From Selaginella moellendorffii (Eukaryota; Plantae; Lycopodiophyta), in contig NW_003314314.1 in the NCBI RefSeq assembly GCF_000143415.4, forward strand, positions 935,771 through 999,770: DNA of 64,000 nucleotides, written 5' to 3'. This document shows positions 9,151 to 64,000 of this stretch, piece after piece. Every line of letters begins with the position of its first letter. The stretch's first letter is position 1. The translations under genes were made by a program, and so were the position numbers. The notes beneath the pieces are model-generated. The model did no database searches, was not told where the DNA came from, and saw only the letters and a list, made by a program, of their open reading frames with translations.

Positions 9151-9396
9151 CCCCGTACGGCCTTCGTACGGTATGGCTGTAAAATCCCCTTCCGTAATGA
9201 CAAGCTAAGTCGCATTTTGTGTCGTCCTAGTCAGTTGCCACGTTGCGAAAAGTCCTGACGTGTTAAGACCATATTATTCTCAATTAAATAATCTCTTTAT
9301 TTCTTAATCGGTCCAATCAGCTGCCACGTTGCAAATCCACTCACAAGAAGATGACGTGTCACAGCATCCCGTACTGCCACGTAAAGGCTACTTTGC

Positions 9397-10713: not shown

Positions 10714-10824
10714 CGTTCGGGGAAGAAACCCTAGCGACAAACAGTAAATTAAGGCGTAAAAAACGGCGGGAAATCTCAACAGAAATTTAGGCTTAGGGTT
10801 CTTCGCGTGGAAACTACCCGAGAG

Positions 10825-12046: not shown

Positions 12047-12416
12047 CTGACAGCCAAGCTCGGTGTCAAGTTCTTGAGAAGTATGTTCACCATCTACTTA
12101 GTTTTTAGGAAAGATATTGTCGTTCGAGCTCGATAACTAGTTAAATGCTTGCAAGATCTTGTAACGAAGCAAATGTTTCCTCTAAGAGAAGAACTCTGCG
12201 ATTGTAGTACACCTGCCAGCTTATCGAAAAACTTGGAACTCGAACTTACTTGCCTGTTTGATCGTCGCGCCTGCCAATGCCGATGGAATGACCTGTCAGC
12301 GGCTTTAAATGCTGTAAACGCGGCGATTTGCTCCTCACCGCGTGCAAATTAAACTCGCCATTGTTTTAACTTGGATGCACAGCTTGTCTGAAGAATCATC
12401 CTTTCAGGGCCCAGTT

Positions 12417-12790
12417 ATGTCGTCCCCAACTGTAGCAGCACAGAGAAACCTCCTCGTTGCGACACTTGTGCTTCTTCTCGTAGCGATTTCTAGCGGGAAC
12501 ACCAGCAGCAAATCACCTGTGGTATGTATGAAACTTTTTCAGCTTACCTGAGATGTTTGAAGGTTTTCCAGAGCAAAGGCAGGATGTTTCGCCAAGACTA
12601 TCGCGATGTGAATCCAATCCCTCGGCCATGGCTACCACTGAGACCAGGACCAATCGTCTTCATAAGGCCCGTTCCTCGCTCTCCTCCACCTCCAAAGAGT
12701 TCACTCTCGCTTCCGCCGGCACCGAGTCCTCTCCCGGGACCACAGGGACGTCGGAGGACCAAAAGGACGTTGCCAGGCTCACGAACTTGA
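12417..12790 (+). CDS. Small secreted Pro-rich peptide precursor with DY motif (PSY-like candidate), 2 exons
   Basis: Exon 1 (12417-12521) encodes a signal peptide (LLVATLVLLLVAISSG); 50-bp phase-0 intron 12522-12571; exon 2 reads SKGRMFRQDYRDVNPIPRPWLP...SPPPPK. Confidence 0.6.
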
Positions 12791-12795
12791 CGTCT

Positions 12796-14480
12796 TCACC
12801 AGTCAAGTGTATCAGAGTTTCCAGTTGTAAAGCCAACGAGTGATTGCAGAGCCAGCCTCGCTCCCGACTTGTAAATGCCGTCCAATGGATTCTTTGGAAA
12901 TTCAAAGTCGAAGTTTTCTTCTTCGGGCTTGAAAGATACCGAGTCATGCTGCGACACCTCAAAGAGCTTGCCTGGACAGTCGTCTTCCAGCTTGAAACAT
13001 AAGGAGTCCACCTCAAAGAGCTTGCCTGGACTGTCGTATCCTTGGTTGTATCCGTCTTCTTCTTCGTCTTGGATCTCCGAGATATCAAACCGTCCAGCCG
13101 ATCTGAGTTCTTCTTGGATCTCCGAGATATCAAACTGTCCAGCCGATCTGAGTTCTTCGCAGTCTGAATGGCCGTCGCCTTCAAGCTGTGAATCGTTTCC
13201 ATCTATCGAATGCAGTCCCAATGTATCCTTCGTAACTTCAAAGCTCAATTTTTCTTCTTCCGGCTCGGAATATAGCGACGAGAGTAAGTCCTGTTGCGGC
13301 ACCTCGAACAGCTGGCCTGGACTGTCGAGCTTGTCTGTCTCGATACTCTGGCTTGAGAGATTTACATTTGGGAACCGTCCAGCACTCCATGCCGATCTTG
13401 TCATCTCCTTGACGTTCCAGGTTTTCAGTGCTTCGTAGTCTGAATCTCCGTCGTCGTCTTTGAGCTGTGAACGACTCTCAACATGCCCCTCCCAATCCGC
13501 ACTATTGTCATCCGAAAGCCCGGAACTCCACGCTAATTCCGTCATCTCCTTGATATTCCAGTTCTTCAAGGCTTCGAAGTGAGAATCCTCTTCGTCTTCA
13601 AGCAGTAAGGGACTTCCAGGTTGAAGTAGTTTATGGCCTTTTTCCTCGCACGAGATGGCCGGATTAACAACGTCCAGCCTCCTGAGCAGTGTTTCGACTC
13701 TGGGAGGCCTGGAAAATAAATTAGCTACCAACGTGAGCAAAATCAACCCAATGTAACCTTACCCCTTAGATTTGGAACTCCGAGATGATAGTTCTTGGAG
13801 ATTATGTTGGATTCGCGTGAATATGTTCTTATAGTTGCCCGTGTAGATTGCCCCTGTGCATAGTAGTATTTAGAACAAGAGAATAGCTACAATCTTCAAG
13901 AACTTTACCATCATCGCTTTTACTTCCCCTTAACATTCCATCTGTCGAGGAAGGAAAAGGTCAAAACATTAAGTACAATGCTGAAACTTATTACCATTGT
14001 GTCTTTGCGTATGAGTTGGAGAACTTAAATCTCGATTTTCTTTGGAACGTTTGAAGTAGATTTCACCTTAAAACAGACTCAGGGTCAATGAGATTTCTAG
14101 ATCACACCTTAAAAATCTTACCATCATCCTTGTGACTTCCAGTATTTTCTGGACACCATGAAAAAATTACAATCCTGAAATAATCACCAATCTTACCTTC
14201 GTAGCTTCCCTTGTAGCTCAAATCTGGGAAAACGAAGTGAGAGCTAGAATTATAAAACAATGCTATAAGAAACTACCATCATTTTTGTCGCTTCCCGAGT
14301 CGATTGTTCCTGGACAAAAAAGGATACCGAGAATGACGCAGGAACAATAGTAAAGGCTTACGATCGTCTCGCTCTGGGGTGTGTACTTCTGGCAGACACT
14401 GCTGGAACCGTTTGAAGAAACTAAACTCGGACGTCCTCGGCCTGTCGAAGAAGCTCGAATTCTGGAAAACCGTCCTTCTC
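12796..14480 (-). CDS. Hypothetical acidic protein with internal repeats; large last exon 12796-~13710 plus short upstream exons; start uncertain
   Basis: 316-aa ORF with duplicated EALKxWNxKEMT, EELRSAGxFDISEIQ and DSPGxLFEV motifs; several CTTACC donors (minus strand) at 13760-14280. Confidence 0.5.
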
Positions 14481-14798
14481 AATTGCCGCGTCTTGTTCCT
14501 GAATGGTAACCACGTAAGAACGAGCCAAGCCGGACCATAATCTCACTTCAAGCGCTTCTTCTCGAGCGCGCGACGCGATCGGAACCCCTGAATACCAAAA
14601 TCAAGGAAAGATCGGAGACCTGCAATGCCAGATGCGCCTACTTGCGACGCGGAGGAGGAGGACGATGCCGATGACGCCGTGCCAAGGCTTCGGACTCCCA
14701 TTGCTGAAGAGCCCTAATACTCTGCTCCACAAAGCCGTAAGACCCTGATTTTCCCGCCTTGTTTTCGAATTTCCCGCCCTAGGTCTTCTTCGCGCGCG

Positions 14799-15847
14799 AT
14801 GGCTGGCACCAAGGGTCAAGCGCCTAAGCTTCGCAAGCGCGTCGACGCTGCTGTGGAGCTCAAGCGTGCCGCCGATGGAAGTGGATTTGTTCGCTGGTAT
14901 GTGTTTTCGTGACGATTCTATGGAAGCCCTAGTCTCCAATCGTTCTTTCTCTATTCAGCGAAGAATGCAAGAAGGATGTGCCAGTTGCGGTGGCAGACAT
15001 GCATACATGCAGTAGCTTGAAGGTGCCCTTGAGAGGTGAGCGAAGATTTTGCTTTCCCCCCTTTTCTTGGTTTTCATCACGCTAGTTTTGTTAGTTTCAA
15101 GTGCGCCAGAGAGGAAGCCGATGGAAAAGCAAAGTAAGAAACGCAGTGGTGGTAAAACAGAAGAGAAGAAGCCGAAGAAGCAAGCCAAGAAGAGAAAAAA
15201 GGACAGTAATCTTCCAAAGAAGCCAATGACGGCGTTCTTCCTCTTCATGTAAGACTGCTTTCGTTGCTTGAGTCGTTTCGAGTTATTTCACTGTTGTGAT
15301 GGTTTTGCTCTCAGGGAGGACTTCAGGCAAAAGAAAAAGGCAGAGAATGTGAAGGGCTCTGAGGTTGGATGCTGCGACAAATTTTTTTCATCATGCTAAC
15401 TTGGATGTGTGTTTTTTGTTACAGGTAGCGAAGCTTGGGGGAGAAGCATGGAAGGCGATGACACAAGAGGTCGTGAAAATATTGTCTTTGTTTTTCTTGA
15501 CTGATTGTTTTCCTTTTTCCAGGAAAAAGCTCCTTACACTGAGAAGGCAGCTCAACTGAAACGAGAATACGATGCTGAAGTTAAAAAACTAAATGCCGAT
15601 GAAGCTTCCGAGGTAAACTTTGTAGCTTCATTACGTTATCTTGGTCTGATAACCCAACTGGCAGCCGAAGGAGGACGATGGCGGTGAATCCGGCAGGGAG
15701 GATTGCAGAGTCATGAACGAAGAGAACGCCGATGAGTCGGAGAAGGAGAATGGAAGCGGATCGGCCACTGAAGCAGAAGAGGTTTGAATAAAAAACTCCA
15801 ACTTCACATCTACTTTTAACTTTTTTGTTTCTCTGTTTTTGCAGTAG
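14799..15847 (+). CDS. HMG-box protein, HMGB7-type (N-terminal C-x2-C...H-x-C motif, acidic tail)
   Basis: MAGTKGQAPKLRKRVDAA...RAADGSGFVRCEECKKDVPVAVADMHTC; KDSNLPKKPMTAFFLFM; AKLGGEAWKAMT; EKAPY. The last coding exon is only the TAG at 15845-15847. Confidence 0.88.
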
Positions 15848-16244
15848 CTAGTTGTTTATGCATAGCGTTGTTAAATATTTGACAAACCAGGATTTTTCGC
15901 TGAGCTTGATTCGTTACAAAGCGATAAAAGAGACATGAAAAAAATGAGAAAATCGAAAAATCACTTTCTGTACCGTAGGAGCATAAAGATCAGGTCCTGC
16001 CCGCCTCTAGAGACCATACTACGAACAGCATTGGAAGGTTCGTCCGGCTGTTTATCAGTATAACTCATTGATTCTTTTTTATTTCTCTCCAGCAGTACAG
16101 AAGATTTGTGGCTGCTTAGGAAGAGCAGTCAAGGTCTTTACTGTGACTTGCCGTGTCATCGCTGGAGTCTGAGGTCTTATTGTCGCCCTCTAAGGTTTGC
16201 ACTGGAATTCATCGCTGATACATGCCAGGTGTGAGCAGGCAGGC

Positions 16245-18210
16245 ATGAGAAATCCCGGTATTGTTAGAAAGCTAGTTCTTCTGGCGTGGTTTCAATGGGG
16301 GGTAGCAACAGCAGCAGCAATTTGCGAGAGAACGAGCTGCGGTAATGTCACTGTTCAATACCCCTTTGGTCTCGGATATGGCTGTGGAAGTCCCGGCTTT
16401 GGGCTAAGCTGCACAGACTCTGTCTTGTACTTCAACAGTTCGATTGTGGGAAGCATCGACTACAATGGCCGAAGTTTGGTTTTGAGCTCCGGTGAAGGCT
16501 GCCCCTTGAGGAATCCTTCAACGGAGATTCAGATCTGTAGCAGAAACCAAAGAAATGACGGGAATGGACAGCAAGTATGTTTGCTTGGTTACAGTAGCTG
16601 CTGCTTGGAAAGAAACTCGTCATTCGACGGAGAAGGATGTATGGCTTACAGGGCGGCTGGAGGCTCGTCTTCAACAGTTAGTGCTTCTCTGGGTGATTTT
16701 TCACTCAGGTGGCCTGTGGAACTACAGACTAGGTGCGACCCTTGCCATCGCGTTGGGAATGGACAGTGCGGCTACAACTCAACAAGTGATTTCGTCTGCT
16801 TTTGTGCGACGTCAAACACGACCGCAACTTGCAGTGACCCTCGTAAGTAATTATCATTTTTCTTCCTGCTTCGCAGCTCACATTTGGACGTATCTCTGCA
16901 GAAGGCCGAACCAATGCTCCAATAATCATATCAGGTATATCAGGTAGTTTGATTTCTAAGATGGTTATTTTATGAGAGTGGCGACTTACTTTCGATTGGC
17001 ATGAACAGGCTCTGTCGCCATCGCGGTGATTGTCGTGGTTCTCGTGTTCGGAGTGAGCCTCTCAATATACTGGAAGTGGAAAAAGAATGGCCGCGAGAGC
17101 ACGCCAGAGCCGATTTTCTCACTCGACGATCCCAGCCGAGATGTCGAAAACCTCCGCCAGATACTCTCCACGCGCAGGGGCGACCCCGCAAAGCTCTACA
17201 CCTTATCCGAGATCGACAAGGCCACAAACGGTTTCGACAAGGAACACAAGATTGGCAGCGGTGGCTTTGGCACTGTTTACAAAGGACTCTTCGACGACGG
17301 CTCGGTTCTAGCAATCAAGAGAGCAAACCACACATCAAAGCAAAGCTCGCGGCACTTTTACAACGAGGTGGCCGTCCTTTCACAGGTAAACCACCGCAAC
17401 TTACTCAGGCTCATGGGTTGCTGCGTCGACTCGGACGTTCCCATACTCGTGTACGAGTACATTCCAAACGGGAATCTCTTCGAACATCTCCACAAGAGGC
17501 CGGGGGTTTTAAGCTGGAGCAACAGACTGACGATCGCAATAGAGACGGCCGAGGCACTTGCTTACTTGCACTCGGCTGCGTATCCACCGATCTATCACAG
17601 GGACGTAAAGTCGGCCAACATTCTCCTCGACAACGCCTTCACGACGAAGGTGGCGGACTTTGGCCTCTCCCGGCTGGTTCCCGTGGACGTGACTCACGTC
17701 TCGACCATGGTACAAGGAACTCCCGGCTACGTCGACCCGGAGTATCACCAGACGTATCAGCTCACGGACAAGAGCGACGTCTACAGCTTTGGGGTGGTGC
17801 TGCTGGAGATGGTCACGGGGCGCAAGCCAGTGGACTTCGCCAGAGCTTCCAAGGACGTGAACCTCAGCGCCTACTCGGTGCCTTTGATCCGGAAGGGACT
17901 GATCGAGGAGATCGTGGACCCGAAGCTGGAAGTGAGAGTTTCTGGCAACGCGGCCGACTTGGAGCTCCTGGAATCCATCCGAGCAGTGGCCAACGTCGCG
18001 ATGGCGTGCCTGGCGTTTACGAGAGACGAGCGGCCGACGATGAAGAGAGTGTTGGAGGAGCTTGTGGCGATCCGGGGGTCGGATGGATTGATTAGGACGG
18101 AGTGGCTGGAAGGCGAGGTGATTCTCACCGAGAGTTTCCATCCCAGCGAGGGTGTCTCGTATAACAGCGGTCGGTCGCGAGATCATTCAGCGGAGATAAC
18201 GGCCAGGTAA
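16245..18210 (+). CDS. Wall-associated kinase-like receptor kinase (GUB_WAK ectodomain, TM, RD kinase)
   Basis: Signal peptide; CGNVTVQYPFG...CG; Cys-rich ectodomain; TM IVVVLVFGVSLSIYW; GSGGFGTVY, HRDVKSANILL, DFGLSR, GTPGYVDPEY. Confidence 0.93.
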
Positions 18211-45140: not shown

Positions 45141-46073
45141 TTACTCGCGCGACTCCTCGTTTCCCTGATGCATCTTGGTGTCCAGGCCTTCCACTGCAGC
45201 AGCACCCAGGGGACGTTGCTGACGCCAAGGTCTCCACCCAGGAAATGGAGGTCGCCAATCCGGAAAACGACGGCAACGCCGATAAGTATGACCAACTTCA
45301 TCACACGCCCAGCAGCGAACATCACGGCCACGACCACGTCCTCGCGCTTGTCCTTGGACTCGAGCAGCAGCAGCATCAACCTCCATTGGAACAGGACCAT
45401 CACCCATAGGAAGTGGAGCGGAAGGACGTGTAGCGAGAAGTGGAAGAGGCGACATCTCATAATGTTGTGCCAAGCGAAGAGCATCGTCAAGGGTGGCAGG
45501 AGCAAGTGCATGCACAAGTCCGACAAGATCTTGACGAAGTGCTGGCCACAACATTCCTAGCTTGATCCGCTCCGACATATTTGGCTCCGCACGAAGCAAA
45601 AGACTTCGGAAAAGAACGCCAAATTGCATCACCGACTCCGATGGCCCTTGGCGAAGACGATGCAATTGTTGGAAAGCATCATCACAATCATCGGCATGTC
45701 CGAAGGCGCGTTTGAAGACGTCCGGGAGAACACTCCAATCCCCACGAGTAGCTGCGCTCAAACCATTGTACAACTGCAACGCCGTCCCTTGGAGATATGT
45801 GGGAAACTCACGCAACCGTCGAGCATCATCCCAAGAATGATATGTGGCAATCACCGTAAAGTGATCAAACCAATGGTACACATCATCCCCAGGATTCCTG
45901 CGAAAGAACTCCGGCCGAACGCGAGGATTGGCACCAAGAGCAAGAGGAGTTCTACCACGTGCCGTGAACGCCGCCATCAACTGAGTTTGGTTGTTCAATT
46001 GCAAGTGCATAGCATCAAGCAATTGAACCAACTGCTGCTCTAGAGTCAAAGGAGGAGATTGCGGATCGGCCAT
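45141..46073 (-). CDS. gag: Gag of gypsy copy 2 (intact ORF)
   Basis: MADPQSPPLTLEQQL...CWACDEVGHTYRRC...HQGNEESRE*. Confidence 0.9.
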   Translation of the reverse strand: MADPQSPPLTLEQQLVQLLDAMHLQLNNQTQLMAAFTARGRTPLALGANPRVRPEFFRRNPGDDVYHWFDHFTVIATYHSWDDARRLREFPTYLQGTALQLYNGLSAATRGDWSVLPDVFKRAFGHADDCDDAFQQLHRLRQGPSESVMQFGVLFRSLLLRAEPNMSERIKLGMLWPALRQDLVGLVHALAPATLDDALRLAQHYEMSPLPLLATRPSAPLPMGDGPVPMEVDAAAARVQGQARGRGRGRDVRCWACDEVGHTYRRCRRFPDWRPPFPGWRPWRQQRPLGAAAVEGLDTKMHQGNEESRE

Positions 46074-46307
46074 GAAGATGAACGAAAAAGAAAGAGCAAA
46101 GAAGAGAAATGACAAAAAAAGCTGGAAAGAAATGGTAGATCTAGATAATGCAAAAAACTAGATCGAAACCAAAATCCTGAAAGGAAAGAACAAAAGAAAG
46201 GAAATGGAAAAAGCTAGATCTAGACGATGCAAAAGCTAGATCTAAACCGAAATCCCAAATCCAAGCACTCCCCAGGGACAATCAAAGGTGCCCCTCATTT
46301 CCACCAA

Positions 46308-46481: not shown

Positions 46482-48000
46482 GTATGTATTAAATGTTTAT
46501 CTTTATATTAAAAAAATATTAAATATTAAATATTAATTCACTAATATACTACCTTATTTTTTAATTAATATTTTAAAAATGATTTTTAAAAATAAATTAC
46601 ATGATCGGGTTGAAATTAAACCTATAAAAAAAAAGAATATATTAATTCACTAATAAACTTAAGTTAACTACTATATTTTTTAATTAATATTTTAAAAATG
46701 ATTTTCAAAAATAAATTACATGATAGAATTGAAATTAAACTTATGAAAAAACAATATAAATGCATTTATTTGTTGTTTGCCCATACTTAATATTAACTTA
46801 TTCATATTAATCATCCATCAATTTCATTTTTTTCGTAACATCTTTTTAATCATTGCAAACTTATCAGGTTCTAAACACATTTTAATAGCCTTTCAGTTTT
46901 TAAAAGTAATAATGTTATTAGTGTTAAAAATGTAAAATAAAAAATTATATTTTTAGTTTATTTATATTTTATTTATTTTAATCAATATTTCTACTAATTT
47001 TTAAAATTTTTGAGAATTCAAGATCAATTGAATGTTTAATATTAAAAAAACAAATATACATTTCAAATTGTTGCAAAAAACAAACTTTCAATGATAAAAC
47101 ACTCCAATTTATTTTTATAGAGAATATAAAATGTATGTATCAAATGTTTATTATTATATTAAAAATTATAAGTATAATGAATATTAATTCACTACTAAAC
47201 TTATGTTAACTACTTTATTTTTAAACTAATATTATTGAATTTATTATTTCTTTTCAAGTAATGTTGAAATTAATTATTAATCAACTTGTTCATATCAATT
47301 AATATAATATTATTGATATTCAGTAATATCCATTTAATTTTTATAAACTTGTGAATTACTTGATTTCCAAACAGATTTTAATGATTTTTCATTTTGCAAA
47401 AGTAAACTAAAAGAAGCAAATATATCACACCTGCATTGGAGTGGCAGATGAGGTTAATAATGTCTTCAAGTAGTATTAGTTATTAGTGTACTCCATTGTT
47501 AACTAATTAAACAAATTAATTTTTTAACTTTTTAAAATTTATTTATTTAAAATTTAAAATTTTTGAGAATTTAAGATGAACTGAATGTTTAATATTAAGA
47601 AAAAAAACATAAACCTCAAATAGTCATAAACAACAAACTTTCAATATTAAAATATTTAAACTTAATTTTTATGGAGGATATAAAATGTATATATCAAATG
47701 TTTATTTTTATTTTTAAAAATATTAGATAGTTAATATTAATTCACTATTAAAGTTATGTTAATAAATTATTTTTTAATTAATATTTTAAAATCAAATTTT
47801 ATCTTTCTTTTTAAAAAATTATGTGGCAGAGATGAGGTTAAATCTACCCTTGTTCATGTTAATTATTCATCAAATTTGTTTATAATAATTAATATAACAT
47901 AATTTACATTCAATAACATCCCTTTAATCTCATAACTTTTCATCTTGTAAAAGTGAACTAGAGCAATCAGTATTTTTACCTAACAAAGATATTGCACTTA
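46482..48000. repeat. Very AT-rich degenerate tandem repeat (~550-640-bp unit), continuing at ~32700-33008 on the other side of the retrotransposon
   Basis: ATATAARATGTATRTATYAAATGTTTAT recurs across the 33008/46486 junction and at ~47124 and ~47678; GTGTTAAAAATGYAA recurs at 32803 and 46921. Confidence 0.7.
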
Positions 48001-49186: not shown

Positions 49187-49305
49187 CGAAGAACCCTAAA
49201 CCTCTTTTAGGTTTAAACAGAGCAGACCCGAGGTTCGATTCCTCGCCGCGACAGGATTGTCCATTACAACGGTCACATTTTGGGGTGGAGTTTTAGGGCT
49301 TTGTG

Positions 49306-51373
49306 ATGGGGAGAAGTGCTCTAAGCCATGGCGATTTTCACAAGCTTCCGCGGCGCAAGCTCCAGCAGCTGTGCAAGAAGCACGGAATCCCAGCGAACAA
49401 GACGAACAGATTCATGGCGGATGCGCTGTCGAAGATTTCCATGGTATGAATCCATCCAGGGCATTTGAAAAGTCGCTCACGGCTTTGTGCATTCCAGGAG
49501 GAGATTGATGAAGAAATTGAGGTAGAACAAGAGGTGCGCGGTGGCTCGGAGACACAATCGGAGGCTACAGAGGTGGACAAGCAAGTCGAAGGCAGTGAGG
49601 AGCGTGTGACAAACTCGCTTCTAAGTGATTCTGGGAAGATTGCTGTGAGTAATGGAGTTAAGAGCCCTATAGAAATGGGAAATCAAGCAGCTTTGGAGAT
49701 GGATCCACAGAATATGGTACATTTTCTATAGCAATGCTCCTTTCTTACTAGTAGCTTTGTTTAACAGCGGCCAAGTCCACAAGCGCTCGACCATAGGTAA
49801 AACACTTCCTTACTGTGGGAAATTTTCTTTTCTTTTTTTTTTATTGTTCCAATTCTGCAGGAACAGCGAGAATGTGGTGAGTTTTGTGCTCTCGGTGTTC
49901 TTCTAACTTATTTGTGCGTCTAGGAGGATCTTTCACGCGGTTCTGGGGACGGGTATATAGTTTTATCTAGTTTTATTGTTCTGCCAATGCTTATTTCTTG
50001 ATTGTTTTCAGGATAATCGAGGATAAGGTAACCTTTGTAAGCACCTCACTCCCGTTGTGTATGGAAGATCTACATCTGTGCAGGAAGAGTTTTCTCAACG
50101 TCCAACTCCACAAGGTCACAACGTCGAGTATGCGTTTACTTTTCCTTCATATCGTTGTTCACGCTCTCGAAATGCTTGCAGGTTATACATGGTAAGAGTT
50201 GTATGAATGATAACCTGGATGTTCTTCTGATTTCCGCGTGTCTCTAGGACGATGTTCCAGAAGTCCTTCAAGACGGGTATGGTAGTCAGTAATTTCTGTC
50301 AGTGTCAGGCACTCACATTCTTGTATTATTGTGTAGGCAAAGCGAGAATATGGTGAGGTTCACGGTAGAGTAACGAGCCTCTAACATCTATACTTGTACA
50401 GGATTGCTGTGAGCTCTCAAGTCCAGAAGTTATTGTGGACAGGTATATTAGTCCGTGTTCAGTGCCTCGCATTTTAACATGCTCTTTTAGCAGCCCGCAG
50501 GATGACCCAGAAGTAGCAGACTCGACCGCTCGAGTAGAAACCGAAAACGCGGCGTCCAACAACACATCCATAAAAGCAAGACACTGGAAGGAGATGGTTG
50601 AACGAGCAACGAGGAAAGCTAGGCACAAAGATCACTATAAAGAAGTACCTTTTATGAAGAGGATGCTAGCAAACAGGAGTCTAGTGAGAGCGAGGCTCAA
50701 GAGAACCGAGGTTCTGACGCAGCGGAGGATAAAAAGCGTCGACATGGTGCAGAACGACGAAGTGTTACGGCCAAGATCAAGCAGTGAGGTGAACACAAGA
50801 GGAGAGCTACGTAAGGAGCAGCCAGTGTTTGGAAGGAAGAGGTTTATGGAGAAGGCGATGGCAGAGTCCGCGAAGAAAATGACCGAGAAGAGAGGTGCGG
50901 CAGCTTCGCCGTTGAGGAACATATCGAACCAGCTCAGTGTCCGCGATCAAGCCAGTGCTCCAGTGGATAGTCCAGCAAATCGAGACGCTCCACGAAGAAC
51001 ACCCGTCAGCCTCTGTGGAGGAAAGGTCGCCAGTGTTCACAGAAGACACCAGGCACAATTCAAGACTCCTCTCTTGGGAAAGTCTCATCAGAAGACGTTG
51101 TCGGCTGTTTCCAAGATGGCAGCGCTGCAGCGAAACGAGATCTTGAGCTCCAGACGACGCATGTTTGACAAGGAGGTGGTAAGTGATCTATCTTATCGTT
51201 TTGATTACCTTCGTTTTCTCGACATCGTGCTCTTGTTTGCAGGAAAGCTAGGCTCCTCAAAAAAATCAGTGCCTGCAACTACTCTAAAGGTTTTTCTATT
51301 GCTAGGCCCAAGGCTTTGCGAAATTGTCGTCGTTTCACTGCCTAATGCGTGGTTTCCAGGCAAAAGAAACTGA
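49306..51373 (+). CDS. Uncharacterised protein with N-terminal SAP/HeH-like motif, micro-exon-rich middle and basic C-terminus
   Basis: MGRSALSHGDFHKLPRRKLQQLCKKHGIPANKTNRFMADAL; run of 10-45-nt AG/GT-bounded exons at 49768-50442; large exon ~50491-51177. Confidence 0.65.
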
Positions 51374-52133
51374 CCAAGCCGGGATACAAGTTGTGTGCCA
51401 TCTCCCAAAACATCTCTCCACAAGAATCCACAGCAGCATCGTCCGAGCCGACGAGGTCAGAGAAGAGACGAGCATACACGGCCTTGATGAGATCAGCGAC
51501 GATCTTCATGGAATGGATGGCCAGCTCCTCCGCTTTGTCGGGGCACTTATCGGGATTGCACGACTTGACTGGAAATGCCGGCAAGACGAACTCGAGTGGA
51601 ATATTCCTTGCGACGTGGTACCTCGTCCTGTCTGCGAACCTCTGTTTGCCTCCGCTGGTGAACCACTGGCCGTGCTTTGGGAAGTGGATGTCATTCTGCT
51701 CAGCGATGTCCACAACTTGGGAGGTGATCGCTCGATGTCGCCACCTTTTGAGGTATGTGCGAGCTGAAGGGCTCCAGAAACTCCCTGGTCATGGCACTGT
51801 TTTCCAGCAGGAGAGAACTCATGCTCTTGCTAGCCTCCTGGAGACTGGGATCCTGGATGAAAACCACGCCCTCAAATTCTAAAAGTATCTCTCGTAGAGT
51901 GTGGCTTCCCACGAAGAGCATGAATCAGCTCCATGCATGAATATGGTGTGTCTCTGATCGTGCGGCTTTCTTGGCCGCCTCTAAATCTTCTGCTGTGCTC
52001 GTAACCATGGAAGAAAACATGAATTCCTCACTACTGCTCTTCTGAGTGGGGGACATATCCGCGAGATGAATGCAACCTCGCCATTCTCCCTGTGGATAAA
52101 CAAGAACGCAATCTTGTCTTTTGGAAAGGCCAT
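51342..52133 (-). pseudogene. Dit1/PvcA-family isocyanide (isonitrile) synthase homologue; intronless, frameshifted and C-terminally truncated
   Basis: GQWFTSGGKQRFADRTRYHVARNIPLEFVLPAFPVKSCNPDK-CPDKAEELAI...AVYA-RLFSDLVGSDDAAV matches the family pattern LPAFP-x-KS-x-N-x-x-K...PD-x-x-EELA...FSD-x-x-G-x-DD; ATG 52133 MAFPKDKIAFLFIHRENG; internal stops and frameshifts. Confidence 0.8.
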
Positions 52134-52775
52134 GGAGGCCTGTGGAGAGGCAAGGAACGTTAGATGCAGAAGCTGCTAAATCGTGTAGTAGAAACCTTTG
52201 AGCTGGGAGTTTCTACACTGAATAACGTGTTCATCTCCTTTGGAAGAACAGTGACGTACCTCTCATTGTCCTGTGAAGCTTCGCATGTTTTTAGAAGAAA
52301 AATTTAAACAAAGATCATGACAGACGCCTAGAATCTTCTTTAGCAAGTTTTTATTCAATTTTAAATAAATTGCTACATGTTGCATGTAATAATGCTTAGT
52401 TTAGTCAATGGATCAAATAAAGTTTATAATTACAAACATGTTTGTAATTTATAAACACAAGATTAATCTTATTGCATATCAACCATTAGATGAAATACTA
52501 GAAAAGGTTTAAGAAAGTAAAACATGTTTATAAATAAAAAATACAAGATTAATCTAAATAAATAACAACCGTTAGATGGTAGAATCTTAAAATATTTAAA
52601 TATATTTTAAGTATATTCACTACCACCTTTTACAAGTTTGATTAAATCTACTGGAGAATAGTCAACGGTCTAACATGCTAACATTTAACTGGTTGACGAG
52701 ATCCTTGACCCAAGTAAACCATGCTCTAACAATAGGTATAATTTGAATATAGATTACCTCGTAGAAATTGTTACA

Positions 52776-54548
52776 CTAAGCAAATGGGATGCAGCTGCTA
52801 CTCACACGATCAAACTGAATGGCATCGCTGCCCGCCTCGATTGTCCTCGAGTAGCACCCATCACTGCTCTGGAAACTATACGTCTGATTGAGCGCTCCAC
52901 CTCCACTCACGACCTTGTTCCCTGCGATCACGATCTTCCCAGCCGCGTCCTGCTTGTTGTCAAGCCGGCTCCAGTAAAACTCCCCGCCTCCACTGCCGTG
53001 ATGCACCTCAATCTCCTCCGCCACTCCATGGGAGATCCTCGTCTCCGAGACAATCGAGCCATCGGCGGGTGTAGTCTCGGAGTCGAACACGTGGAGCGGA
53101 TACGAGCTGGAAGTTTGCTGGAGCTCGATCTGCTCGTCGCCACTGGCCACCACGACCTTGGCATTGGTGTCGATACTCTGATCTACAGTTGTTATCTCGC
53201 CATTGTTCCCAGAGAAGTCCATCCGGTTGGAGAACGCGTAGCTGTACGAGGAGGTGGTGAAGAGCTTGCCGCGCGAGGAAGACTCGACGTAGCCCGAGTA
53301 CTGGAGAGACCGAGAGGCGGCCACCCGGAGAGAGCCGACCGGGCCTTTGTAGCGTGCGTCATAGCTGATACCGGCTGCTGGAGCGTTGTAGGAGACAAGC
53401 TGCCCGGACGTCTCAGAGCTACCGTGGTCGAGCCAGAGGTGTAAGTTGGCGTCCAGTAGCCAAAACCTGAAAGCATTGGTGACGCTGAAGCCGATCTCAT
53501 GGCTGCCACCGTCCACCAGCAGACCAACAAATGGAGTTATGTCGAGAGTGTAGCTTGGCAGGTCGAAAGCTCCGATTGCGGCTGCTGGAGCCCAAAGCAG
53601 TGGATTGATTCCACCCGTGAAGATCACTGGCAAGGGACAGATCTCTCCCGCGAGGAACCCGTCGACAGTGACCAGAACTTCTCTGTAGGGACCGTTCCTG
53701 GAAGCCGTGTTGATATTGTTGGCGTCCAAGTAGTCGTTCGTGGGATTCATGTACCAGAACTCGTCGTTGCCGTGGAAGGAGACGTAGACCTCGAGCTTGG
53801 CCTTGTAGATGTTCGTCGGGAGATTGCTCAACTCCACGCGGCCAGCGTCGGAGCTGTTTTGGATCTGGAACCAGTAGCCACCGTTTCCCGAGGTTGGCAG
53901 CGCGACTGGAAGAACAATATCGGCAGGAGCCTCGGCATCCACCAGAGAAGAAGACGAGTTGGACGACTTGTAGAAGTTGGCAGTGAGCGTCACGTTGAAA
54001 AACCCGGTGTAAGTCTCGTCGATCACATTGGCTAGCGCGACTTCCAAACTCTGTGGCTTGTCTAGCAAGGCACGATACTTGGTGACGTCTTTCTCTACCG
54101 TCCAGAAGATCCCTTTCCTGGTCGGCTCGGCGGTGGACGTCCGGAAGATCTCCACTCCACTCAGCCACACGGCCGAGATCCGATCGAACTGCCGGCCTTT
54201 GGACGTGACATTCCAGACGAGGATCACCTTGTCCCAATCTTCGCTACACTCGGGAGCTTGAGGAGGATTGTAAGGCACCACGACCGGCGGCGAGCTGATC
54301 GTGTTGCCGAAAGAATACTTCAGCAGCAGCTGCGACGCGCAGTGGCCTGACTTTGGAACTGAAAGTGGCTTGCTCACCTCGAAAAACCTTGAAAGGGAAT
54401 CCTGCTGCTGCTGTTGCTGCTCATCAACTGAGAACGCTGGTCGTCGAGGCTGCTCGAAATCCAGGTCCCCCAGCTGAAACCTGCTGCTTCTCCCAGGAAT
54501 CGCCTGAGCCACTGCCGCCAAAAGTAGCAGGAGCACCACCAGCGCCAT
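52776..54548 (-). CDS. Peptide-N4-(N-acetyl-beta-glucosaminyl)asparagine amidase A (PNGase A), copy 1, intronless
   Basis: Signal peptide; FFEVSKP; GRQFDR; RTSTAEP; HGNDEFWY; GPYREV; PVIFTGGINP; DITPF; LHLWLD. Confidence 0.93.
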   Translation of the reverse strand: MALVVLLLLLAAVAQAIPGRSSRFQLGDLDFEQPRRPAFSVDEQQQQQQDSLSRFFEVSKPLSVPKSGHCASQLLLKYSFGNTISSPPVVVPYNPPQAPECSEDWDKVILVWNVTSKGRQFDRISAVWLSGVEIFRTSTAEPTRKGIFWTVEKDVTKYRALLDKPQSLEVALANVIDETYTGFFNVTLTANFYKSSNSSSSLVDAEAPADIVLPVALPTSGNGGYWFQIQNSSDAGRVELSNLPTNIYKAKLEVYVSFHGNDEFWYMNPTNDYLDANNINTASRNGPYREVLVTVDGFLAGEICPLPVIFTGGINPLLWAPAAAIGAFDLPSYTLDITPFVGLLVDGGSHEIGFSVTNAFRFWLLDANLHLWLDHGSSETSGQLVSYNAPAAGISYDARYKGPVGSLRVAASRSLQYSGYVESSSRGKLFTTSSYSYAFSNRMDFSGNNGEITTVDQSIDTNAKVVVASGDEQIELQQTSSSYPLHVFDSETTPADGSIVSETRISHGVAEEIEVHHGSGGGEFYWSRLDNKQDAAGKIVIAGNKVVSGGGALNQTYSFQSSDGCYSRTIEAGSDAIQFDRVSSSCIPFA

Positions 54549-54609: not shown

Positions 54610-56367
54610 TTAAGCGCTGGCGATGCATCGAAAACCACTTTCATCGTACTGTGTTGTAGTGTTGCTCGTTCGGATGCTCCGGTGGTAACATCCCTCGCTG
54701 CTCTCGGACACATAAGTCTGGTTTAGCTTTCCCGTCCCACTGGTGACTATATTCGCTTGGATGACGATTTTCCCGGCAGTGTCTTGCTTGTTGTTGAGCC
54801 GGCTCCAAAAGGAGTCGTCGTCGTATTCTTCTTGAAGTCCATGCGAGATCCTGGCGTCTAAAACAACAGACTTGTTGGTTCCATCCTTCTGTGAGTTGTA
54901 GAGAAAGAAAGGGTACGAGCTCGACTTCTGCTGCAATCTAACCTGCTTGGAGCTGCTTTCCACCAGGAACTTCGTCTGTGCATCGATGAGCTGCTTTACT
55001 GTGGAAACGCTGCCATTTTCGGAGAAGACCATCTGGTTGGAGAACTTGTAGCTGTACGATGAAGTCGTTATGAGCTTCCCGTGAGAGGAAGACTCGACGT
55101 AGCCCGAGTACTGAAGTGACCGAGAGGCAGACAGCAGAAGAGTACCGTCGAGACCTTTGTAGTGTGAGTCGTAACTGATAACGGCTGGAGGAGAGCTGTA
55201 AGAGATGAGCTTTCCGGACGTTTGCGAGCTACCATGGTCCAGCCAGAGGTGTAAGTTGGCGTCCAATAACCAGTTCCTGACAGCGTTGGTGACGCTCAAG
55301 CTGATCTCGTGGCTGTTCCCATCCACCAGCTGGCCAACAAACGGAGTTACGTCGAGAATGTAGGTTGGTAGATTGAAAGCCCCGATTGCTGCTGCTGGTC
55401 TCCAAAACAGTGGATTGACGCCACCCGTGTAGATCACTGGAAAGGGACAAATCTCTCCAACAAGCTTCCCGTCCAGAGTAACCAGCACTTCCCTGTAGGG
55501 ACCGTTCCTGGAGCCCGAACTGCTTTCACCGTTGGCGTCCAAGTAATCGTTCGTTGGATTGGTGTACCAGAACTCGTCGTCACCATGGAAGGAAACGCAG
55601 ACCTCGAGCTCCGCCTTGTAGATGTTTCGAGGAAGACTGGTGAGGTTCACAGTTCCAACGTGGGAACTGTTTTGGAGCTGGAACCAGTAGCCACCATTCT
55701 CCGAAGTTGGCAAAGCGATTGGAAGAACGAGATCAGCGGGCATCGCCTTCGAAGAGCGCTTGGAGTTTCTCTGAGCGGGCTTGTAGAACTCGGCAGTGAG
55801 GGTGACGTTGAAGAAGCCCGTGTAAGTTTTGTCGATCACGTTCGCAAGAGAGACCGCCAAGACCTGTGGCTTCTCCAGCAACGAAGTATACTTCGTGATG
55901 TCCTTCTCGACGCTCCACACAATCCCTTGCTTGGTAGGCTCCGCCGTGCAAGTCCGGAAGATTTCCACTCCAGACAGCCATGCTGCGGAGATTCGGTCGA
56001 ACTGCCTGCCCCTGGATGCTACGCTCCACCTGAGGATCACTCTCTCCCAACCCCCACCGCAGTGGCTCGATCGGGGAGGATTATAAGGAGCAGTGACCGG
56101 GGGCGAGCTGATCGTGTTGCCGAAAGAATGCTTTAGCAGCAGCAGCGTCGCGCAGTGGCCGGATCTAGGGATGGACAGCGGCTTGCTCACCTCGAAGAAC
56201 GTCAGTGGAGCTGGATCTGGGGCTGGCGCTGGAGCTGGCGCTAGCGAGGAATGCCGGTGTTCGGAGTGCTCGAAATCCAGGCCGCCGAGACGAAATCTAC
56301 CTTTCCCTTGCGCCGTCGCCGCCAGGAAGAGCAGGAAGAGCACAAGCGCCATGGATTCCCTGGTCAT
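54610..56367 (-). CDS. PNGase A, copy 2 (tandem paralogue), intronless
   Basis: Same motifs (GRQFDR, RTCTAEP, HGDDEFWY, YTGGVNP); start at ATG 56367 or 56352. Confidence 0.93.
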   Translation of the reverse strand: MTRESMALVLFLLFLAATAQGKGRFRLGGLDFEHSEHRHSSLAPAPAPAPDPAPLTFFEVSKPLSIPRSGHCATLLLLKHSFGNTISSPPVTAPYNPPRSSHCGGGWERVILRWSVASRGRQFDRISAAWLSGVEIFRTCTAEPTKQGIVWSVEKDITKYTSLLEKPQVLAVSLANVIDKTYTGFFNVTLTAEFYKPAQRNSKRSSKAMPADLVLPIALPTSENGGYWFQLQNSSHVGTVNLTSLPRNIYKAELEVCVSFHGDDEFWYTNPTNDYLDANGESSSGSRNGPYREVLVTLDGKLVGEICPFPVIYTGGVNPLFWRPAAAIGAFNLPTYILDVTPFVGQLVDGNSHEISLSVTNAVRNWLLDANLHLWLDHGSSQTSGKLISYSSPPAVISYDSHYKGLDGTLLLSASRSLQYSGYVESSSHGKLITTSSYSYKFSNQMVFSENGSVSTVKQLIDAQTKFLVESSSKQVRLQQKSSSYPFFLYNSQKDGTNKSVVLDARISHGLQEEYDDDSFWSRLNNKQDTAGKIVIQANIVTSGTGKLNQTYVSESSEGCYHRSIRTSNTTTQYDESGFRCIASA

Positions 56368-56503
56368 GGAGTCCACCTAGGGTTTATCGACGGGAAATTT
56401 TAATAAACCCTTTGAGCATATACCAGAATATTCTTCACTCGTATGTAGTCCTTTACTGCATTCCCGCCATTAGGGCCTAGGGTTTATCACCTTGGCGGTG
56501 GCG
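56368..56503. promoter_or_regulatory. Compact (~136 bp) divergent promoter region shared by PNGase A and MSH2, with two telo-boxes
   Basis: CTAGGGTTTATC at ~56377 and ~56477 between the two head-to-head ATGs. Confidence 0.5.
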
Positions 56504-59944: not shown

Positions 59945-60129
59945 AGGTCTATAATAGTCTCAAGGCACGTTGATTTTACAGGCTTTCGATTTCTTTAACA
60001 GTCTCCTCAAAGCTTCCTATACATATTTTGACTCTTCAAGAGTCGCTATTTAACGTTGGAATGGAAGTTAACGAAAAAACTTTGTCATACAAAAGGAGGA
60101 GGCCATTGAGGGGCAGAAAGTAGGTAGCA

Positions 60130-61672
60130 ATGTTTTGGGCAGTCGCGCTCTTCCTCTTCTCAGCTTTCATTCTCAAGCAATGGCTCTCCAGCAAATCTCT
60201 CAATCTTCCACCAGGTCCCAGAGGATTGCCTCTCATCGGCCACTTCCATCTCCTGGGCAGGCTCCCACACATCTCACTCCAGCAGCTCTCCAAGAGATAT
60301 GGACCCCTCTTTCACTTGCGCCTGGGATCTGTTCCTGTGTTCGTGGTCTCCAGTCCAGAAATGGCCAAGGAGTTTCTCAAGAACCACGACACGGAATTCG
60401 CCTATAGGCCTCGGAACAACGCGTCTCCATAGTCATGGATTGCAGGAGCATGTCTTTCTCGCCATATGGAGACTACTGGAAGAAGCTGAGGAAGCTCTGC
60501 GCCACGGAGATATTCACGGCCAAGAGGGTGAGTATGAACACGCAGATCATCCGGGACGAGCTCTGGGAGCTCAGTGGTGAGCTCTTGAGAGCTTCTAAGG
60601 CTGGCCAAGTTGTCGGAGTGAGACCACACTTGAGGGCGCTCAGCTTCAACGTCATGACTCGCATTCTGATGAAGAAGACGTACTTTGGATCCAAGGCCTC
60701 GGGCGATCCCGCTATTGCGAAGGAGGCCTCGAATTTCATAGCGATGATTGATGAAATCCTCGAGGTGGGAGCGGCTTTCTCGATCACTGACTATTTCCCC
60801 TACTTGAGCTGGCTCGACTTGGTTTCCCGCCGTGCAAAGGTGGCCGGGGATAAGATGAATGGCTTCTTGCAAAAGGTTTTGGACGAGCAGCGCCCCGGTG
60901 AGGTTCCCGATTTCGTGGAGATCACAAGGTCTCACATTGGAAACGATGCGGTCAATCTCAGAGCTCTACTCATGGTAAGTTACGAATCCATGATTTTCTC
61001 TGTGGAACTTACTTGATTGTTCTGTGATCTTGATAGGATCTACTGCTTGGTGGATCTGAAACATCATCCACTGTGACAGAGTGGGCTCTGGCGGAACTTC
61101 TTCACCACCCAGATTGGATGGTCAAAGCTCAGCAAGAGATTGAGAGTGTTGTTGGACGCACACGCATGGTCGAAGAGGGAGACATATCCAAGCTCGAGGT
61201 TTTGAATGCCATCATCAAGGAAACCTTTCGTCTCCACCCTCCAATTGCTTTGCTCGTACCACACGCATCGATGGAGGCCCAGAAAGTTGCAGGCTATGAC
61301 ATCTCCAAGAACGCAATGCTACTTGTGAATGTCTATGCGATAGGAAGAGACCCCCGAGTATGGTGTGATCCTCTGGAGTTCCAGCCCCAAAGATTCATGG
61401 GCAGCAACATCGGTGTCAATGGCCAAGACTTTGAGCTGCTTCCATTTGGATCTGGAAAGAGATCTTGCCCGGGGCTTCCTCTTGGTCTTAGAAACGTCCA
61501 GCTTGTTCTTTCCAATCTTCTTCATGGATTCCAATGGGAGTTCCCTGGAAGCCCAAAAGATCAACAAATGGGTGAAGTTACAGGACTCGTAAACTTTATG
61601 GCACACACTCTCAAAGCCAGGATCACTTCTAGGCTCAATGAAAGTGCCTACACCACTCTCAAGTTAATTTAA
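60130..61672 (+). pseudogene. CYP71-clan cytochrome P450, copy 1, with a 1-bp frameshift near 60423 (pseudogene or sequence error); one intron 60975-61037
   Basis: LPPGPRGLPLIGH; GGSETSS; ETFR; PQRF; FGSGKRSCPG. AACAACGCGTCTCC versus AACAACGTGGTCTCC in copy 2. Confidence 0.88.
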
Positions 61673-63170: not shown

Positions 63171-63359
63171 AAGATGATTTTCAAGGCTTTGAATTTCTTT
63201 GTTATTTAAAAAATTGTCGCAGCTTGGATTTCTTAAGAGTTTAGAAGAAATTTCAAAGTTGCCAAGCTTGGAAGTCAAAGGTCGGACATCTTCCATTTAA
63301 CATTGGAATGGAAGTACTCTCCAGCGCTCGGCTCTACAATTTAGGGGCAGAAAGTAGGA

Positions 63360-64000
63360 ATGTTTTGGGCGGTGCATATAGTGGTCTTCCTCCTCACTGC
63401 TTTCATCCTCAAGCAATGGCTCTCCAGAATATCTCTCAATCTTCCGCCAGGCCCCAGAGGATTACCTCTCATCGGCCACTTCCATCTCCTGGCCATGGGC
63501 AAGCTCCCACACATCGCACTCCAGCAGCTCTCCAAGAGATTTGGACCCCTCTTTCACTTGCGCCTGGGATCTGTCCCTGTGTTCGTGGTCTCCAGTCCAG
63601 AAATGGCCAAGGAGTTTCTCAAGAACCACGACACGGAATTCGCCTATAGGCCTCGGAACAACGTGGTCTCCATAGTCATGGATAGCAGGAGCATGTCTTT
63701 CTCGCCATATGGAGACTACTGGAAGAAGCTGAGGAAGCTCTGCGCCACGGAGATATTCACGGCCAAAAGGATGAGTATGAACACGCAGATCATCCGGGAC
63801 GAGCTGTGGGAGCTCAGTGGTGAGCTATTGAGAGCTTCTAAGGCTGGCCAAGTTGTCGGAGTGAGACCACACTTGAGGGCGCTCAGCTTCAACGTCATGA
63901 CTCGCATTCTGATGAAGAAGACGTACTTTGGATCCAAGGCCTCGGGCGATCCCGCTATTGCGAAGGAGGCCTCGAATTTCATAGCGATGATTGATGAGAT
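63360..64000 (+). CDS. CYP71-clan cytochrome P450, copy 2 (runs off the window)
   Basis: MFWAVHIVVFLLTAFILKQWLSRISLNLPPGPRGLPLIGH...; near-identical to copy 1 and frame intact to the window end. Confidence 0.9.
   Translation, partial: MFWAVHIVVFLLTAFILKQWLSRISLNLPPGPRGLPLIGHFHLLAMGKLPHIALQQLSKRFGPLFHLRLGSVPVFVVSSPEMAKEFLKNHDTEFAYRPRNNVVSIVMDSRSMSFSPYGDYWKKLRKLCATEIFTAKRMSMNTQIIRDELWELSGELLRASKAGQVVGVRPHLRALSFNVMTRILMKKTYFGSKASGDPAIAKEASNFIAMIDE

What the first reader, a model, noticed from the sequence alone, without database searches (positions are those of the whole stretch)
51342..52133. Fungal-type isocyanide synthase (Dit1/PvcA) relic embedded among ordinary plant genes
Seen: a minus-strand, intronless, frameshifted reading with QWFTSGGKQRFADRTRYHVARNIPLEFVLPAFPVKSCNPDK/CPDKAEELAI...VYA/RLFSDLVGSDDAAV, flanked by typical plant genes, which argues against contamination. 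Known: Dit1/PvcA enzymes convert Tyr, Trp or Val to isocyanides in fungi and bacteria and are not a recognised plant pathway. From memory, yeast Dit1 reads DQW..GGR.YF..R.RY...R...IECILPAFPCKSSN..KV.G.VPDKGEELAL...IYPPG...SDGHVFSD.IGVDD. The match includes the N-terminal extension and QW..GG motif of the fungal type. Two short deletions remove the KVxG and PPG...SDG segments, so this copy is probably dead. Inference: fungus-to-plant horizontal transfer. Other relics in this window are decayed copies of intact genes, so an intact parent may exist elsewhere and would imply undescribed isocyanide or dityrosine chemistry in a land plant.
Basis: partly seen in the sequence, partly recalled or inferred. 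Interest (0 to 1): 0.88.

Follow-up and report, generated by a model that had tools for sequence, protein, structure and literature searches.

The report
Dead isocyanide-synthase gene copy in Selaginella
This is a broken, half-length leftover copy of a fungal-type isocyanide synthase (Dit1/PvcA) gene in the spikemoss Selaginella moellendorffii; the genome holds several intact, already annotated copies elsewhere, so this locus is an ordinary pseudogene of an unusual plant gene family.

Summary
On the minus strand, 52133-51355 is homologous to the first 858 of 1555 positions of the Selaginella DIT1-like coding sequence (nhmmer E 8.5e-209). The 123-aa ORF at 51342-51713 hits Pfam DIT1_PvcA (E 2.5e-15). 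The window is 100% identical to S. moellendorffii scaffold GL377618.1.

The copy is dead. It has four frame-breaking indels, in-frame losses of 12 and 33 nt (the second removes the invariant PPG...SDGH motif), a polymorphic 16-nt deletion, and no C-terminal half.

It is not a direct trace of a transfer. It groups inside the Selaginella family, next to one paralogue (87-89% nt identity). At least six full-length paralogues exist, named DIT1 by RefSeq and listed by Lim et al. 2018. The five intronless ones compared have dN/dS 0.11-0.17.

The family falls in the eukaryotic (fungal) Dit1 clade. The best outside hits are chytrids at 37-46%. The donor is unresolved.

One new point: RNA contigs show that the relic is transcribed antisense, as the spliced last 3'UTR exon of the neighbouring plus-strand gene.

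The scan has already noted DIT1 genes on at least eight other pieces of this genome.

The parts
51355..52133 (-). Core of the DIT1/isocyanide-synthase relic. It corresponds to CDS nt 1-866 (residues 1-289 of 520) of the intact Selaginella paralogues.
   Evidence: tblastn; blastn; nhmmer E 8.5e-209, HMM positions 1-858 of 1555
51342..51713 (-). Longest surviving ORF (123 aa). It carries the only Pfam-detectable part of the domain.
   Evidence: PF05141 E 2.5e-15, profile positions 2-106 of 273; 85% identity to P0001 residues 155-289
51313..51354 (-). Decayed tail of the relic beyond a 16-nt deletion at 51354/51355. The deletion is specific to this haplotype: a DNA contig from another data set keeps the 16 nt, which match the paralogues 14/16 and restore the reading LDEFLLHNH.
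   Evidence: read laying insertion behind 51354; comparison with paralogue CDS; weak tblastn match to residues 287-308
52038..52059 (-). First frame-breaking indel cluster (net -10 nt relative to P0001)
   Evidence: pairwise DNA alignment; frame switch visible
51955..51956 (-). 17-nt deletion, frame-breaking
   Evidence: nhmmer alignment
51876..51877 (-). 4-nt deletion, frame-breaking; a stop follows in the old frame
51729..51741 (-). Net +7 nt (1 nt lost, 8 nt gained), frame-breaking; it brings the reading back to the frame of the 123-aa ORF
51546..51547 (-). 12-nt in-frame deletion that removes TLG(M/K), including the nearly invariant G213
51466..51475 (-). 33-nt in-frame loss that removes PPG...SDGH(V), i.e. 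the family-invariant P240, G241, S248, D249, G250, H251 and V252
   Evidence: invariant columns
51360..51858 (+). Terminal 3'UTR exon of the neighbouring plus-strand gene. It is made entirely of the antisense strand of the relic.
   Evidence: RNA contigs X5 record 15 (1153 nt) and X1 record 3 join 51287/51289 to 51358/51360; splice sites read
51290..51359 (+). 70-nt GT..AG intron in the 3'UTR of the plus-strand gene. Its acceptor (TCCAG|G) lies in the last bases of the relic homology.
   Evidence: joints in two RNA runs; sequence
49306..51251 (+). Neighbouring plant gene (459-aa model, no Pfam family) whose transcript runs on into the relic. The CDS ends with a stop in exon 51242-51289.
   Evidence: gene table of L003; spliced translation; Pfam negative
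52776..54548 (-). PNGase A gene, the upstream neighbour (context). Its exact protein match identified the genome.
   Evidence: Pfam; exact look-up on GL377618.1; 100% identity over 21,225 nt

Best explanation
The locus is an unannotated, non-functional partial duplicate (pseudogene) of the DIT1-like isocyanide synthase gene family of Selaginella moellendorffii. A copy of the mostly intronless family gene, closest to the paralogue on scaffold GL377587.1, landed between a PNGase A gene and an uncharacterised plus-strand gene. Only the first ~55% of the coding sequence is present. It has since drifted without coding constraint: four frame-breaking indels, two in-frame deletions that remove invariant motifs, and a 16-nt deletion still polymorphic between haplotypes or accessions. 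It cannot make an isocyanide synthase. Its DNA is still transcribed, but from the opposite strand, as the spliced last 3'UTR exon of the neighbouring gene. Shown: homology, damage, position within the family, linkage to plant genes, antisense transcription. Inferred: the family itself entered the Selaginella lineage from an early-diverging fungus and then multiplied by birth and death of copies. Other decayed copies with different break points exist elsewhere in the genome.
For: Pfam hit. phmmer E 7e-55 to a Selaginella DIT1 protein. nhmmer E 8.5e-209 for HMM positions 1-858 only, with nothing for 859-1555 anywhere in the window at --max; a protein-profile scan of 49300-51420 was also negative. 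Indel catalogue. Loss of invariant residues. DNA tree: the relic is sister to the P0121 copy (94/97), and its branch is 0.12 against 0.054. dN/dS is 0.22-0.24 for relic against intact copies, and 0.12-0.17 among intact copies over the same region. No gene is called at the relic in the GenBank annotation. The window is 100% identical to the S. moellendorffii scaffold. One 1153-nt RNA contig joins the neighbouring gene's coding exon, through two GT..AG introns, to 478 nt of the relic; a 2024 DNA run holds an allelic form. Other decayed copies, L090 and L091, have different truncation points.
Against: The 123-aa ORF is open and dN/dS against intact copies is still well below 1. That is expected if much of the divergence lies on the constrained parental branches, but it does not by itself prove neutrality. 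Logan contigs carry no strand, so sense transcription of the relic cannot be excluded. No DNA contig in the run examined bridges the AT-rich high-copy repeat at 52309-52662, so on that side linkage to PNGase A rests on the published scaffold.
Confidence: 0.9

Rival explanations
1. The relic-derived antisense exon has a function. About 500 nt of the neighbour's 3'UTR are complementary to mRNAs of the active DIT1 paralogues. They could pair with those mRNAs and damp them through double-stranded RNA or siRNA, as described for some pseudogene-derived antisense RNAs.
For: A spliced plus-strand transcript covers 51360-51858 at depths of 15-65 in two RNA runs. Perfect matches of 21-42 nt exist between this exon and six copies of the young paralogue clade (five paralogues, one with its haplotype twin).
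Against: No small-RNA data were examined. The two older paralogues share no 20-nt match. Read-through into a neighbouring dead gene is a common, function-free outcome. Indel polymorphism inside the exon region suggests weak constraint.
Confidence: 0.06
2. The piece is an independent fragment of fungal DNA (a second transfer), or fungal contamination or mis-assembly, rather than a copy of a resident plant gene.
For: The gene type is otherwise fungal or bacterial. There is no flanking homology to any paralogue.
Against: It is 87-89% identical in DNA to Selaginella paralogues and nested among them, but at most 46% identical in protein to any fungus. All paralogues share homology only over the CDS. 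RNA contigs join it to a plant gene with 51-70 nt introns, and an independent DNA run holds it.
Confidence: 0.01
3. The family is not a transfer. It is an ancient eukaryotic gene inherited vertically and lost in all other sampled plants, so the relic says nothing about horizontal transfer.
For: In the rooted trees the Selaginella clade is not placed inside any fungal group with support. It sits in a polytomy at the base of the eukaryotic clade, on a long stem of 1.2-1.3. ICS genes also occur in oomycetes and an amoebozoan (Lim et al. 2018).
Against: Among the 120 best hits listed from a collection of 5.8 billion protein clusters, every named hit is S. moellendorffii or a fungus. Vertical descent would require losses in essentially every other plant and algal lineage. 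Most copies are intronless in a genome whose genes normally have introns. The best outside hits are chytrids over the full length, including the N-terminal extension.
Confidence: 0.1

Closest known systems
S. moellendorffii 'spore wall maturation protein DIT1' genes (XP_002967756.2 = P0001; P0119-P0123; SELMODRAFT_417826 and others)
   Same: Same gene family in the same genome. The relic matches CDS nt 1-866 at 87-89% identity in aligned columns and begins with the same N-terminal motif.
   Different: The annotated copies are full length (498-521 aa). The six aligned keep all family-invariant residues, and the five intronless copies compared have dN/dS 0.11-0.17. The relic is frameshifted, lacks invariant motifs and the C-terminal 45%, and is not annotated.
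Fungal Dit1-type isocyanide synthases (yeast Dit1; chytrid homologues such as Powellomyces and Geranomyces; Lim et al. 2018, PMC5974471)
   Same: Same Pfam domain plus a collinear N-terminal extension of about 160-190 residues that bacteria lack. They belong to the same eukaryotic clade, separated from bacteria with 100/100 support.
   Different: Only 37-46% identity. The Selaginella clade sits on a long stem with no resolved fungal sister. No DIT2-type partner was shown next to the plant genes.
Bacterial isonitrile synthases PvcA (PDB 3E59) and the L-Tyr/L-Trp isonitrile synthase family (9DHM, 9DH4)
   Same: Same catalytic domain; E 3e-24 to 2e-29 against the intact paralogue.
   Different: The bacterial enzymes are 315-350 aa and match only residues ~180-516 at 28-34% identity. 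The relic keeps only about the first 105 domain positions.
Duplicated (unprocessed) pseudogenes transcribed antisense within a neighbour's UTR
   Same: A decayed gene copy read from the opposite strand as part of another gene's mRNA.
   Different: No regulatory effect has been shown here. The parent clade is intronless, so processed and unprocessed origin cannot be told apart.

Membership tests
DIT1_PvcA / isocyanide synthase (Pfam PF05141) | Sequence match above the curated Pfam threshold | tested here: met
   57.1 bits against a cut-off of 26.4, E 2.5e-15
DIT1_PvcA / isocyanide synthase (Pfam PF05141) | Complete domain (about 273 profile positions) in one open reading frame | tested here: not met
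   Only profile positions 2-106 are matched. HMM positions 859-1555 of the CDS profile are absent from the window. There are four frame-breaking indels upstream.
DIT1_PvcA / isocyanide synthase (Pfam PF05141) | Family-invariant residues present (PPG, SDGHVFSD, R326, YRGFS) | tested here: not met
   P240, G241 and S248-V252 are removed by the 33-nt loss. R326 and Y354-S358 lie in the missing half. The six aligned full-length Selaginella paralogues keep them all.
DIT1_PvcA / isocyanide synthase (Pfam PF05141) | Isonitrile or N-formyl-tyrosine forming activity | not testable with these tools
   This needs expression and an assay. It is meaningful only for the intact paralogues.
Fungal (eukaryotic) Dit1 subtype | N-terminal extension homologous to fungal Dit1 proteins and absent from bacterial PvcA | tested here: met
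   P0001 residues 3-160 align collinearly with Powellomyces residues 19-190, E 2e-6. Bacterial matches start at about residue 180. The relic begins with the shared PKD..F motif.
Fungal (eukaryotic) Dit1 subtype | Groups with eukaryotic rather than bacterial sequences in a tree | tested here: met
   The eukaryotic clade has 100/100 support against nine bacterial sequences, and the Selaginella clade inside it has 100/100.
Horizontally acquired gene (fungus to plant) | Integrated in host chromosome among host genes | tested here: met
   Megabase scaffolds with plant genes on both sides at several loci; an RNA contig links the relic to a plant gene.
Horizontally acquired gene (fungus to plant) | Supported nesting of the recipient clade inside the donor group | tested here: inconclusive
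   Polytomy with two chytrid clades, Dikarya and one unnamed sequence.
Horizontally acquired gene (fungus to plant) | Absence from relatives of the recipient | tested here: inconclusive
   Among the 120 best hits listed (of 300 with E <= 1e-10), every named hit is S. moellendorffii or a fungus, and no hit lies between 57% and 44% identity from another species. Unannotated plant genomes are not in that collection, and unnamed hits could not be assigned.
Processed pseudogene (retrocopy) | Lacks the parent's introns, has a poly(A) tract and target-site duplications | tested here: inconclusive
   The parental clade is itself intronless. The 3' end is missing, and no flanking direct repeats were found.

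The most novel reading that the evidence does not exclude
The dead copy may have been recruited as an antisense 3'UTR exon of the neighbouring gene. Its roughly 500 nt of complementarity to the active isocyanide-synthase paralogues, with perfect runs of 21-42 nt, might let that mRNA regulate a horizontally acquired, positively maintained isonitrile pathway in a vascular plant.
Probability: 0.06. Interest if true: 0.6.

Novelty: new member of a known kind. Interest (0 to 1): 0.3.

Why it matters
On its own, the locus is one more pseudogene. Its value is as a marker of a gene family that is unusual for a plant. S. moellendorffii carries at least six full-length fungal-type isocyanide synthase genes. 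The six aligned keep every invariant residue, and the five intronless copies compared evolve under strong purifying selection (dN/dS 0.11-0.17). Two have acquired Selaginella-sized introns. The relic and the other decayed copies show that the family has been turning over inside the genome for a long time. That argues against contamination and for a settled, probably useful, acquisition. I found no paper on what these enzymes make in the plant; databases and one fungal survey merely list them. The experiments worth doing concern the intact copies on other scaffolds, which this scan has already flagged several times, not this window.

Tried and rejected
1. Search for the missing C-terminal half. 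tblastn at E<=1, blastn with word size 7, nhmmer --max with a paralogue CDS profile over the whole window and hmmsearch --max on six-frame translations of 49300-51420 found nothing. A weak tblastn match at 51020-50871 (E 0.27, 'LHRG.RVF' against the LYRGFSRF motif) was not supported by either profile, so I treat it as chance.

2. Transposon capture. There are no terminal inverted or direct repeats around the relic. The upstream AT-rich stretch is only a local 86-nt duplication plus a high-copy repeat.

3. Shared ancestry with other dead copies. L090 and L091 have different truncation points and different indels.

4. Pfam on the upstream frame pieces, the downstream ORFs and the 312-aa plus-strand ORF gave no families.

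5. Literature. Searches for Selaginella with isocyanide, dityrosine, pyoverdine or isonitrile synthase found no functional or HGT study. Searches for DIT1 with Selaginella found only the unrelated plastid dicarboxylate transporter.

6. Resolving the donor. Neither the quick nor the careful tree resolves the sister group. I did not run an AU test.

Full report
**What is there**

On the minus strand, an ATG at 52133 opens a reading that resembles the N-terminus of Dit1-type proteins. It runs, with breaks, to a stop at 51344-51342. The longest open piece is the 123-aa ORF at 51342-51713. It matches Pfam DIT1_PvcA (PF05141) at 57.1 bits, E 2.5e-15, against a cut-off of 26.4, but only over profile positions 2-106 of 273. 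The other frame pieces and the downstream ORFs have no Pfam family. A search of 1.84 billion representative proteins gave three strong hits (E 7e-55, 8e-32 and 4e-25, at 85, 78 and 62% identity). After those the hits drop to about 46% identity.

**Whose genome and whose gene**

The three strong hits are Selaginella moellendorffii proteins. The best is XP_002967756.2, 'spore wall maturation protein DIT1', 520 aa. The next hits are from chytrid fungi: Phlyctochytrium, Geranomyces, Blyttiomyces and Cladochytrium.

The window's PNGase A protein has an exact match on scaffold GL377618.1 of GCA_000143415.2. The window is 100% identical to that scaffold over 21,225 nt, so the window is S. moellendorffii. 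No gene is called at the relic in that annotation.

**Extent and damage**

- tblastn of the intact protein covers residues 1-289 at 52133-51354.
- blastn of the intact locus matches from 3 nt before the ATG to CDS nt 866, with no flanking homology.
- An nhmmer profile of eight paralogue coding sequences matches 52133-51355 to profile positions 1-858 of 1555 (E 8.5e-209). Even with all filters off it finds nothing for the remaining 45% anywhere in the window. A protein-profile scan of the downstream 2 kb is also empty.

Relative to the intact gene there are four frame-breaking events:

| Window position | Change |
|---|---|
| 52059-52038 | net -10 nt |
| 51956/51955 | -17 nt |
| 51877/51876 | -4 nt |
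| 51741-51729 | net +7 nt |

There are also two in-frame losses. The 12-nt loss at 51547/51546 removes TLG(M/K). The 33-nt loss at 51475-51466 removes PPG...SDGH.

The 33-nt loss takes out P240, G241 and S248-V252. These are invariant in an alignment of 18 Selaginella, fungal and unnamed family members. The missing half would hold R326 and the YRGFS motif.

At 51354/51355 the reference lacks 16 nt that a contig from an independent 2024 DNA run still has. The 16 nt match the paralogues at 14 of 16 positions and restore the reading LDEFLLHNH. So homology fades out near 51313 rather than stopping sharply at 51355, and the decay is still polymorphic. The same DNA run also shows a 50-nt indel at 52026-52075.

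**Place in the family**

A full-length search finds six distinct full-length S. moellendorffii proteins: P0001 and P0119-P0123, 498-521 aa, 71-100% identical to P0001. It also finds several degenerate gene models: P0002, P0003, P0124 and P0127.

Their loci lie on megabase scaffolds among ordinary plant genes. One locus is present as two haplotype copies, one as a tandem pair, and one as a head-to-head pair.

In a DNA tree of the first ~866 nt, the relic is sister to the P0121 copy on GL377587.1 (support 94/97). Identity is 87-89% in aligned columns. The relic's terminal branch is about twice as long as P0121's, 0.12 against 0.054.

| Comparison | dN/dS |
|---|---|
| Intact copies, full length | 0.11-0.16 |
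| Intact copies, first 866 nt | 0.12-0.17 |
| Relic against intact copies | 0.22-0.24 |

These values fit relaxed constraint on the relic branch. The paralogues share homology essentially only over their coding sequences, so the relic's lack of flanking homology is typical. Two other decayed copies (L090, L091) have different break points. This is the pattern expected from birth and death of copies.

**Origin of the family**

Bacterial homologues match only residues ~180-516 at 28-34% identity. Solved bacterial isonitrile synthases (9DHM, 9DH4, PvcA 3E59) match at E 1e-24 to 1e-29.

Chytrid proteins match over the whole length. The N-terminal 160 residues align collinearly with Powellomyces at E 2e-6.

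In both a quick and a careful maximum-likelihood tree rooted on bacteria, the eukaryotic sequences form one clade (100/100). Inside it the Selaginella sequences form one clade (100/100) on a long stem. Its position relative to two chytrid clades, Dikarya and one unnamed sequence is unresolved.

Among the 120 best hits listed (of 300 with E <= 1e-10), from a collection of 5.8 billion clusters, every named hit is S. moellendorffii or a fungus. Horizontal acquisition from an early-diverging fungus is therefore the most economical reading. It rests on distribution and similarity, not on a resolved tree.

Two paralogues (P0122, P0123) carry a 55-57 nt GT..AG phase-1 intron in the same region of the CDS, near P0001 codon 256. 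That is a sign of long residence in the plant genome.

**Transcription**

One 1153-nt RNA contig runs from the neighbouring plus-strand gene's exon (to 51177), across a 64-nt GT..AG intron, a 46-nt exon and a 70-nt GT..AG intron, into 51358-51835. A second run gives the same last junction and reaches 51858. The splice signals read GT..AG on the plus strand.

The spliced reading frame of that gene stops at about 51250, matching the end of the annotated model. The relic is therefore transcribed antisense, as the last 3'UTR exon of its neighbour. The splice acceptor sits in the last bases of relic homology.

This also links the relic physically to a plant gene with Selaginella-sized introns, which argues against contamination. 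No DNA contig in the run examined crosses the AT-rich high-copy repeat at 52309-52662, so on that side linkage rests on the published scaffold.

The antisense exon shares perfect runs of 21-42 nt with six copies of the young paralogue clade (five paralogues, one with its haplotype twin). That leaves a small chance of a regulatory role, which I did not test.

**What was already known**

RefSeq names these genes DIT1. Lim et al. 2018 (PMC5974471) surveyed PF05141 across life. Their text reports ICS proteins in 'one species of moss', and their supplementary table lists S. moellendorffii loci, including SELMODRAFT_417826. I found no paper that discusses their origin or function in the plant.

This scan has flagged DIT1/PvcA genes on at least eight other pieces of the same genome. 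Those are unchecked first-reader notes. Here I independently confirmed that intact copies, an intron-bearing form and amplification exist.

**Verdict**

The locus is a dead, half-length, unannotated duplicate of a resident gene family. The family is interesting and under-studied, but its presence is already recorded. The only new points here are the anatomy of this copy and its antisense use as a neighbour's 3'UTR exon.

Noticed in passing
window 52776-54548 and 54610-56376 (minus strand): Two tandem, apparently intronless PNGase A genes about 78% identical in DNA. An RNA contig shows a 'goes back' joint between them that probably reflects their similarity.
   Followed up: partly
window 49797-50401 (plus strand): The neighbouring gene has a run of very short exons (about 31-45 nt) separated by about 120-nt introns, in a roughly 150-nt periodic pattern. 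The RNA joints there carry 13-14 unplaced letters each, so the aligner could not place the micro-exons fully.
   Followed up: no
window 52309-52662: AT-rich stretch with a local 86-nt duplication. Summed k-mer depth in the DNA run is 7,000-18,000, against about 16-18 nearby. This is a very high-copy repeat, or organelle-like or satellite sequence, and it breaks short-read contigs.
   Followed up: partly
window 46500-48000: GC content falls to 15-20% for about 1.5 kb, next to a retrotransposon gag ORF (45141-46115).
   Followed up: no
L088 6761-6817 and L089 6743-6797 (other scaffolds of the same genome): Two DIT1 paralogues (P0122, P0123) each carry a 55-57 nt canonical GT..AG phase-1 intron in the same region of the CDS (near P0001 codon 256), while the younger clade is intronless. 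This is either intron gain after acquisition or loss in the young clade.
   Followed up: partly
L001 6346-8027, L089 1858-3239, L088 11331-12510: Intact DIT1 paralogues repeatedly sit near a PF02458 (BAHD-type) transferase gene and, at one locus, a 2OG-Fe(II) oxygenase gene. This could be chance, or rudimentary clustering of a pathway.
   Followed up: no
L087 3324-5143 and 5952-7497: Two DIT1 copies lie head to head about 0.8 kb apart. The P0121 copy has its own frameshift near the N-terminus, and its gene model starts at an internal ATG.
   Followed up: partly
window 60105-61317 and 63339-64000: Duplicated cytochrome P450 gene segments (about 94% identical) lie beyond MSH2. I did not test whether they are plant-type or related to fungal DIT2.
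   Followed up: no
sequencing runs X12 and X17: RNA runs labelled as two other coded organisms hold the window near-identically (share 0.41-0.50). They could be mislabelled samples or very close relatives.
   Followed up: no
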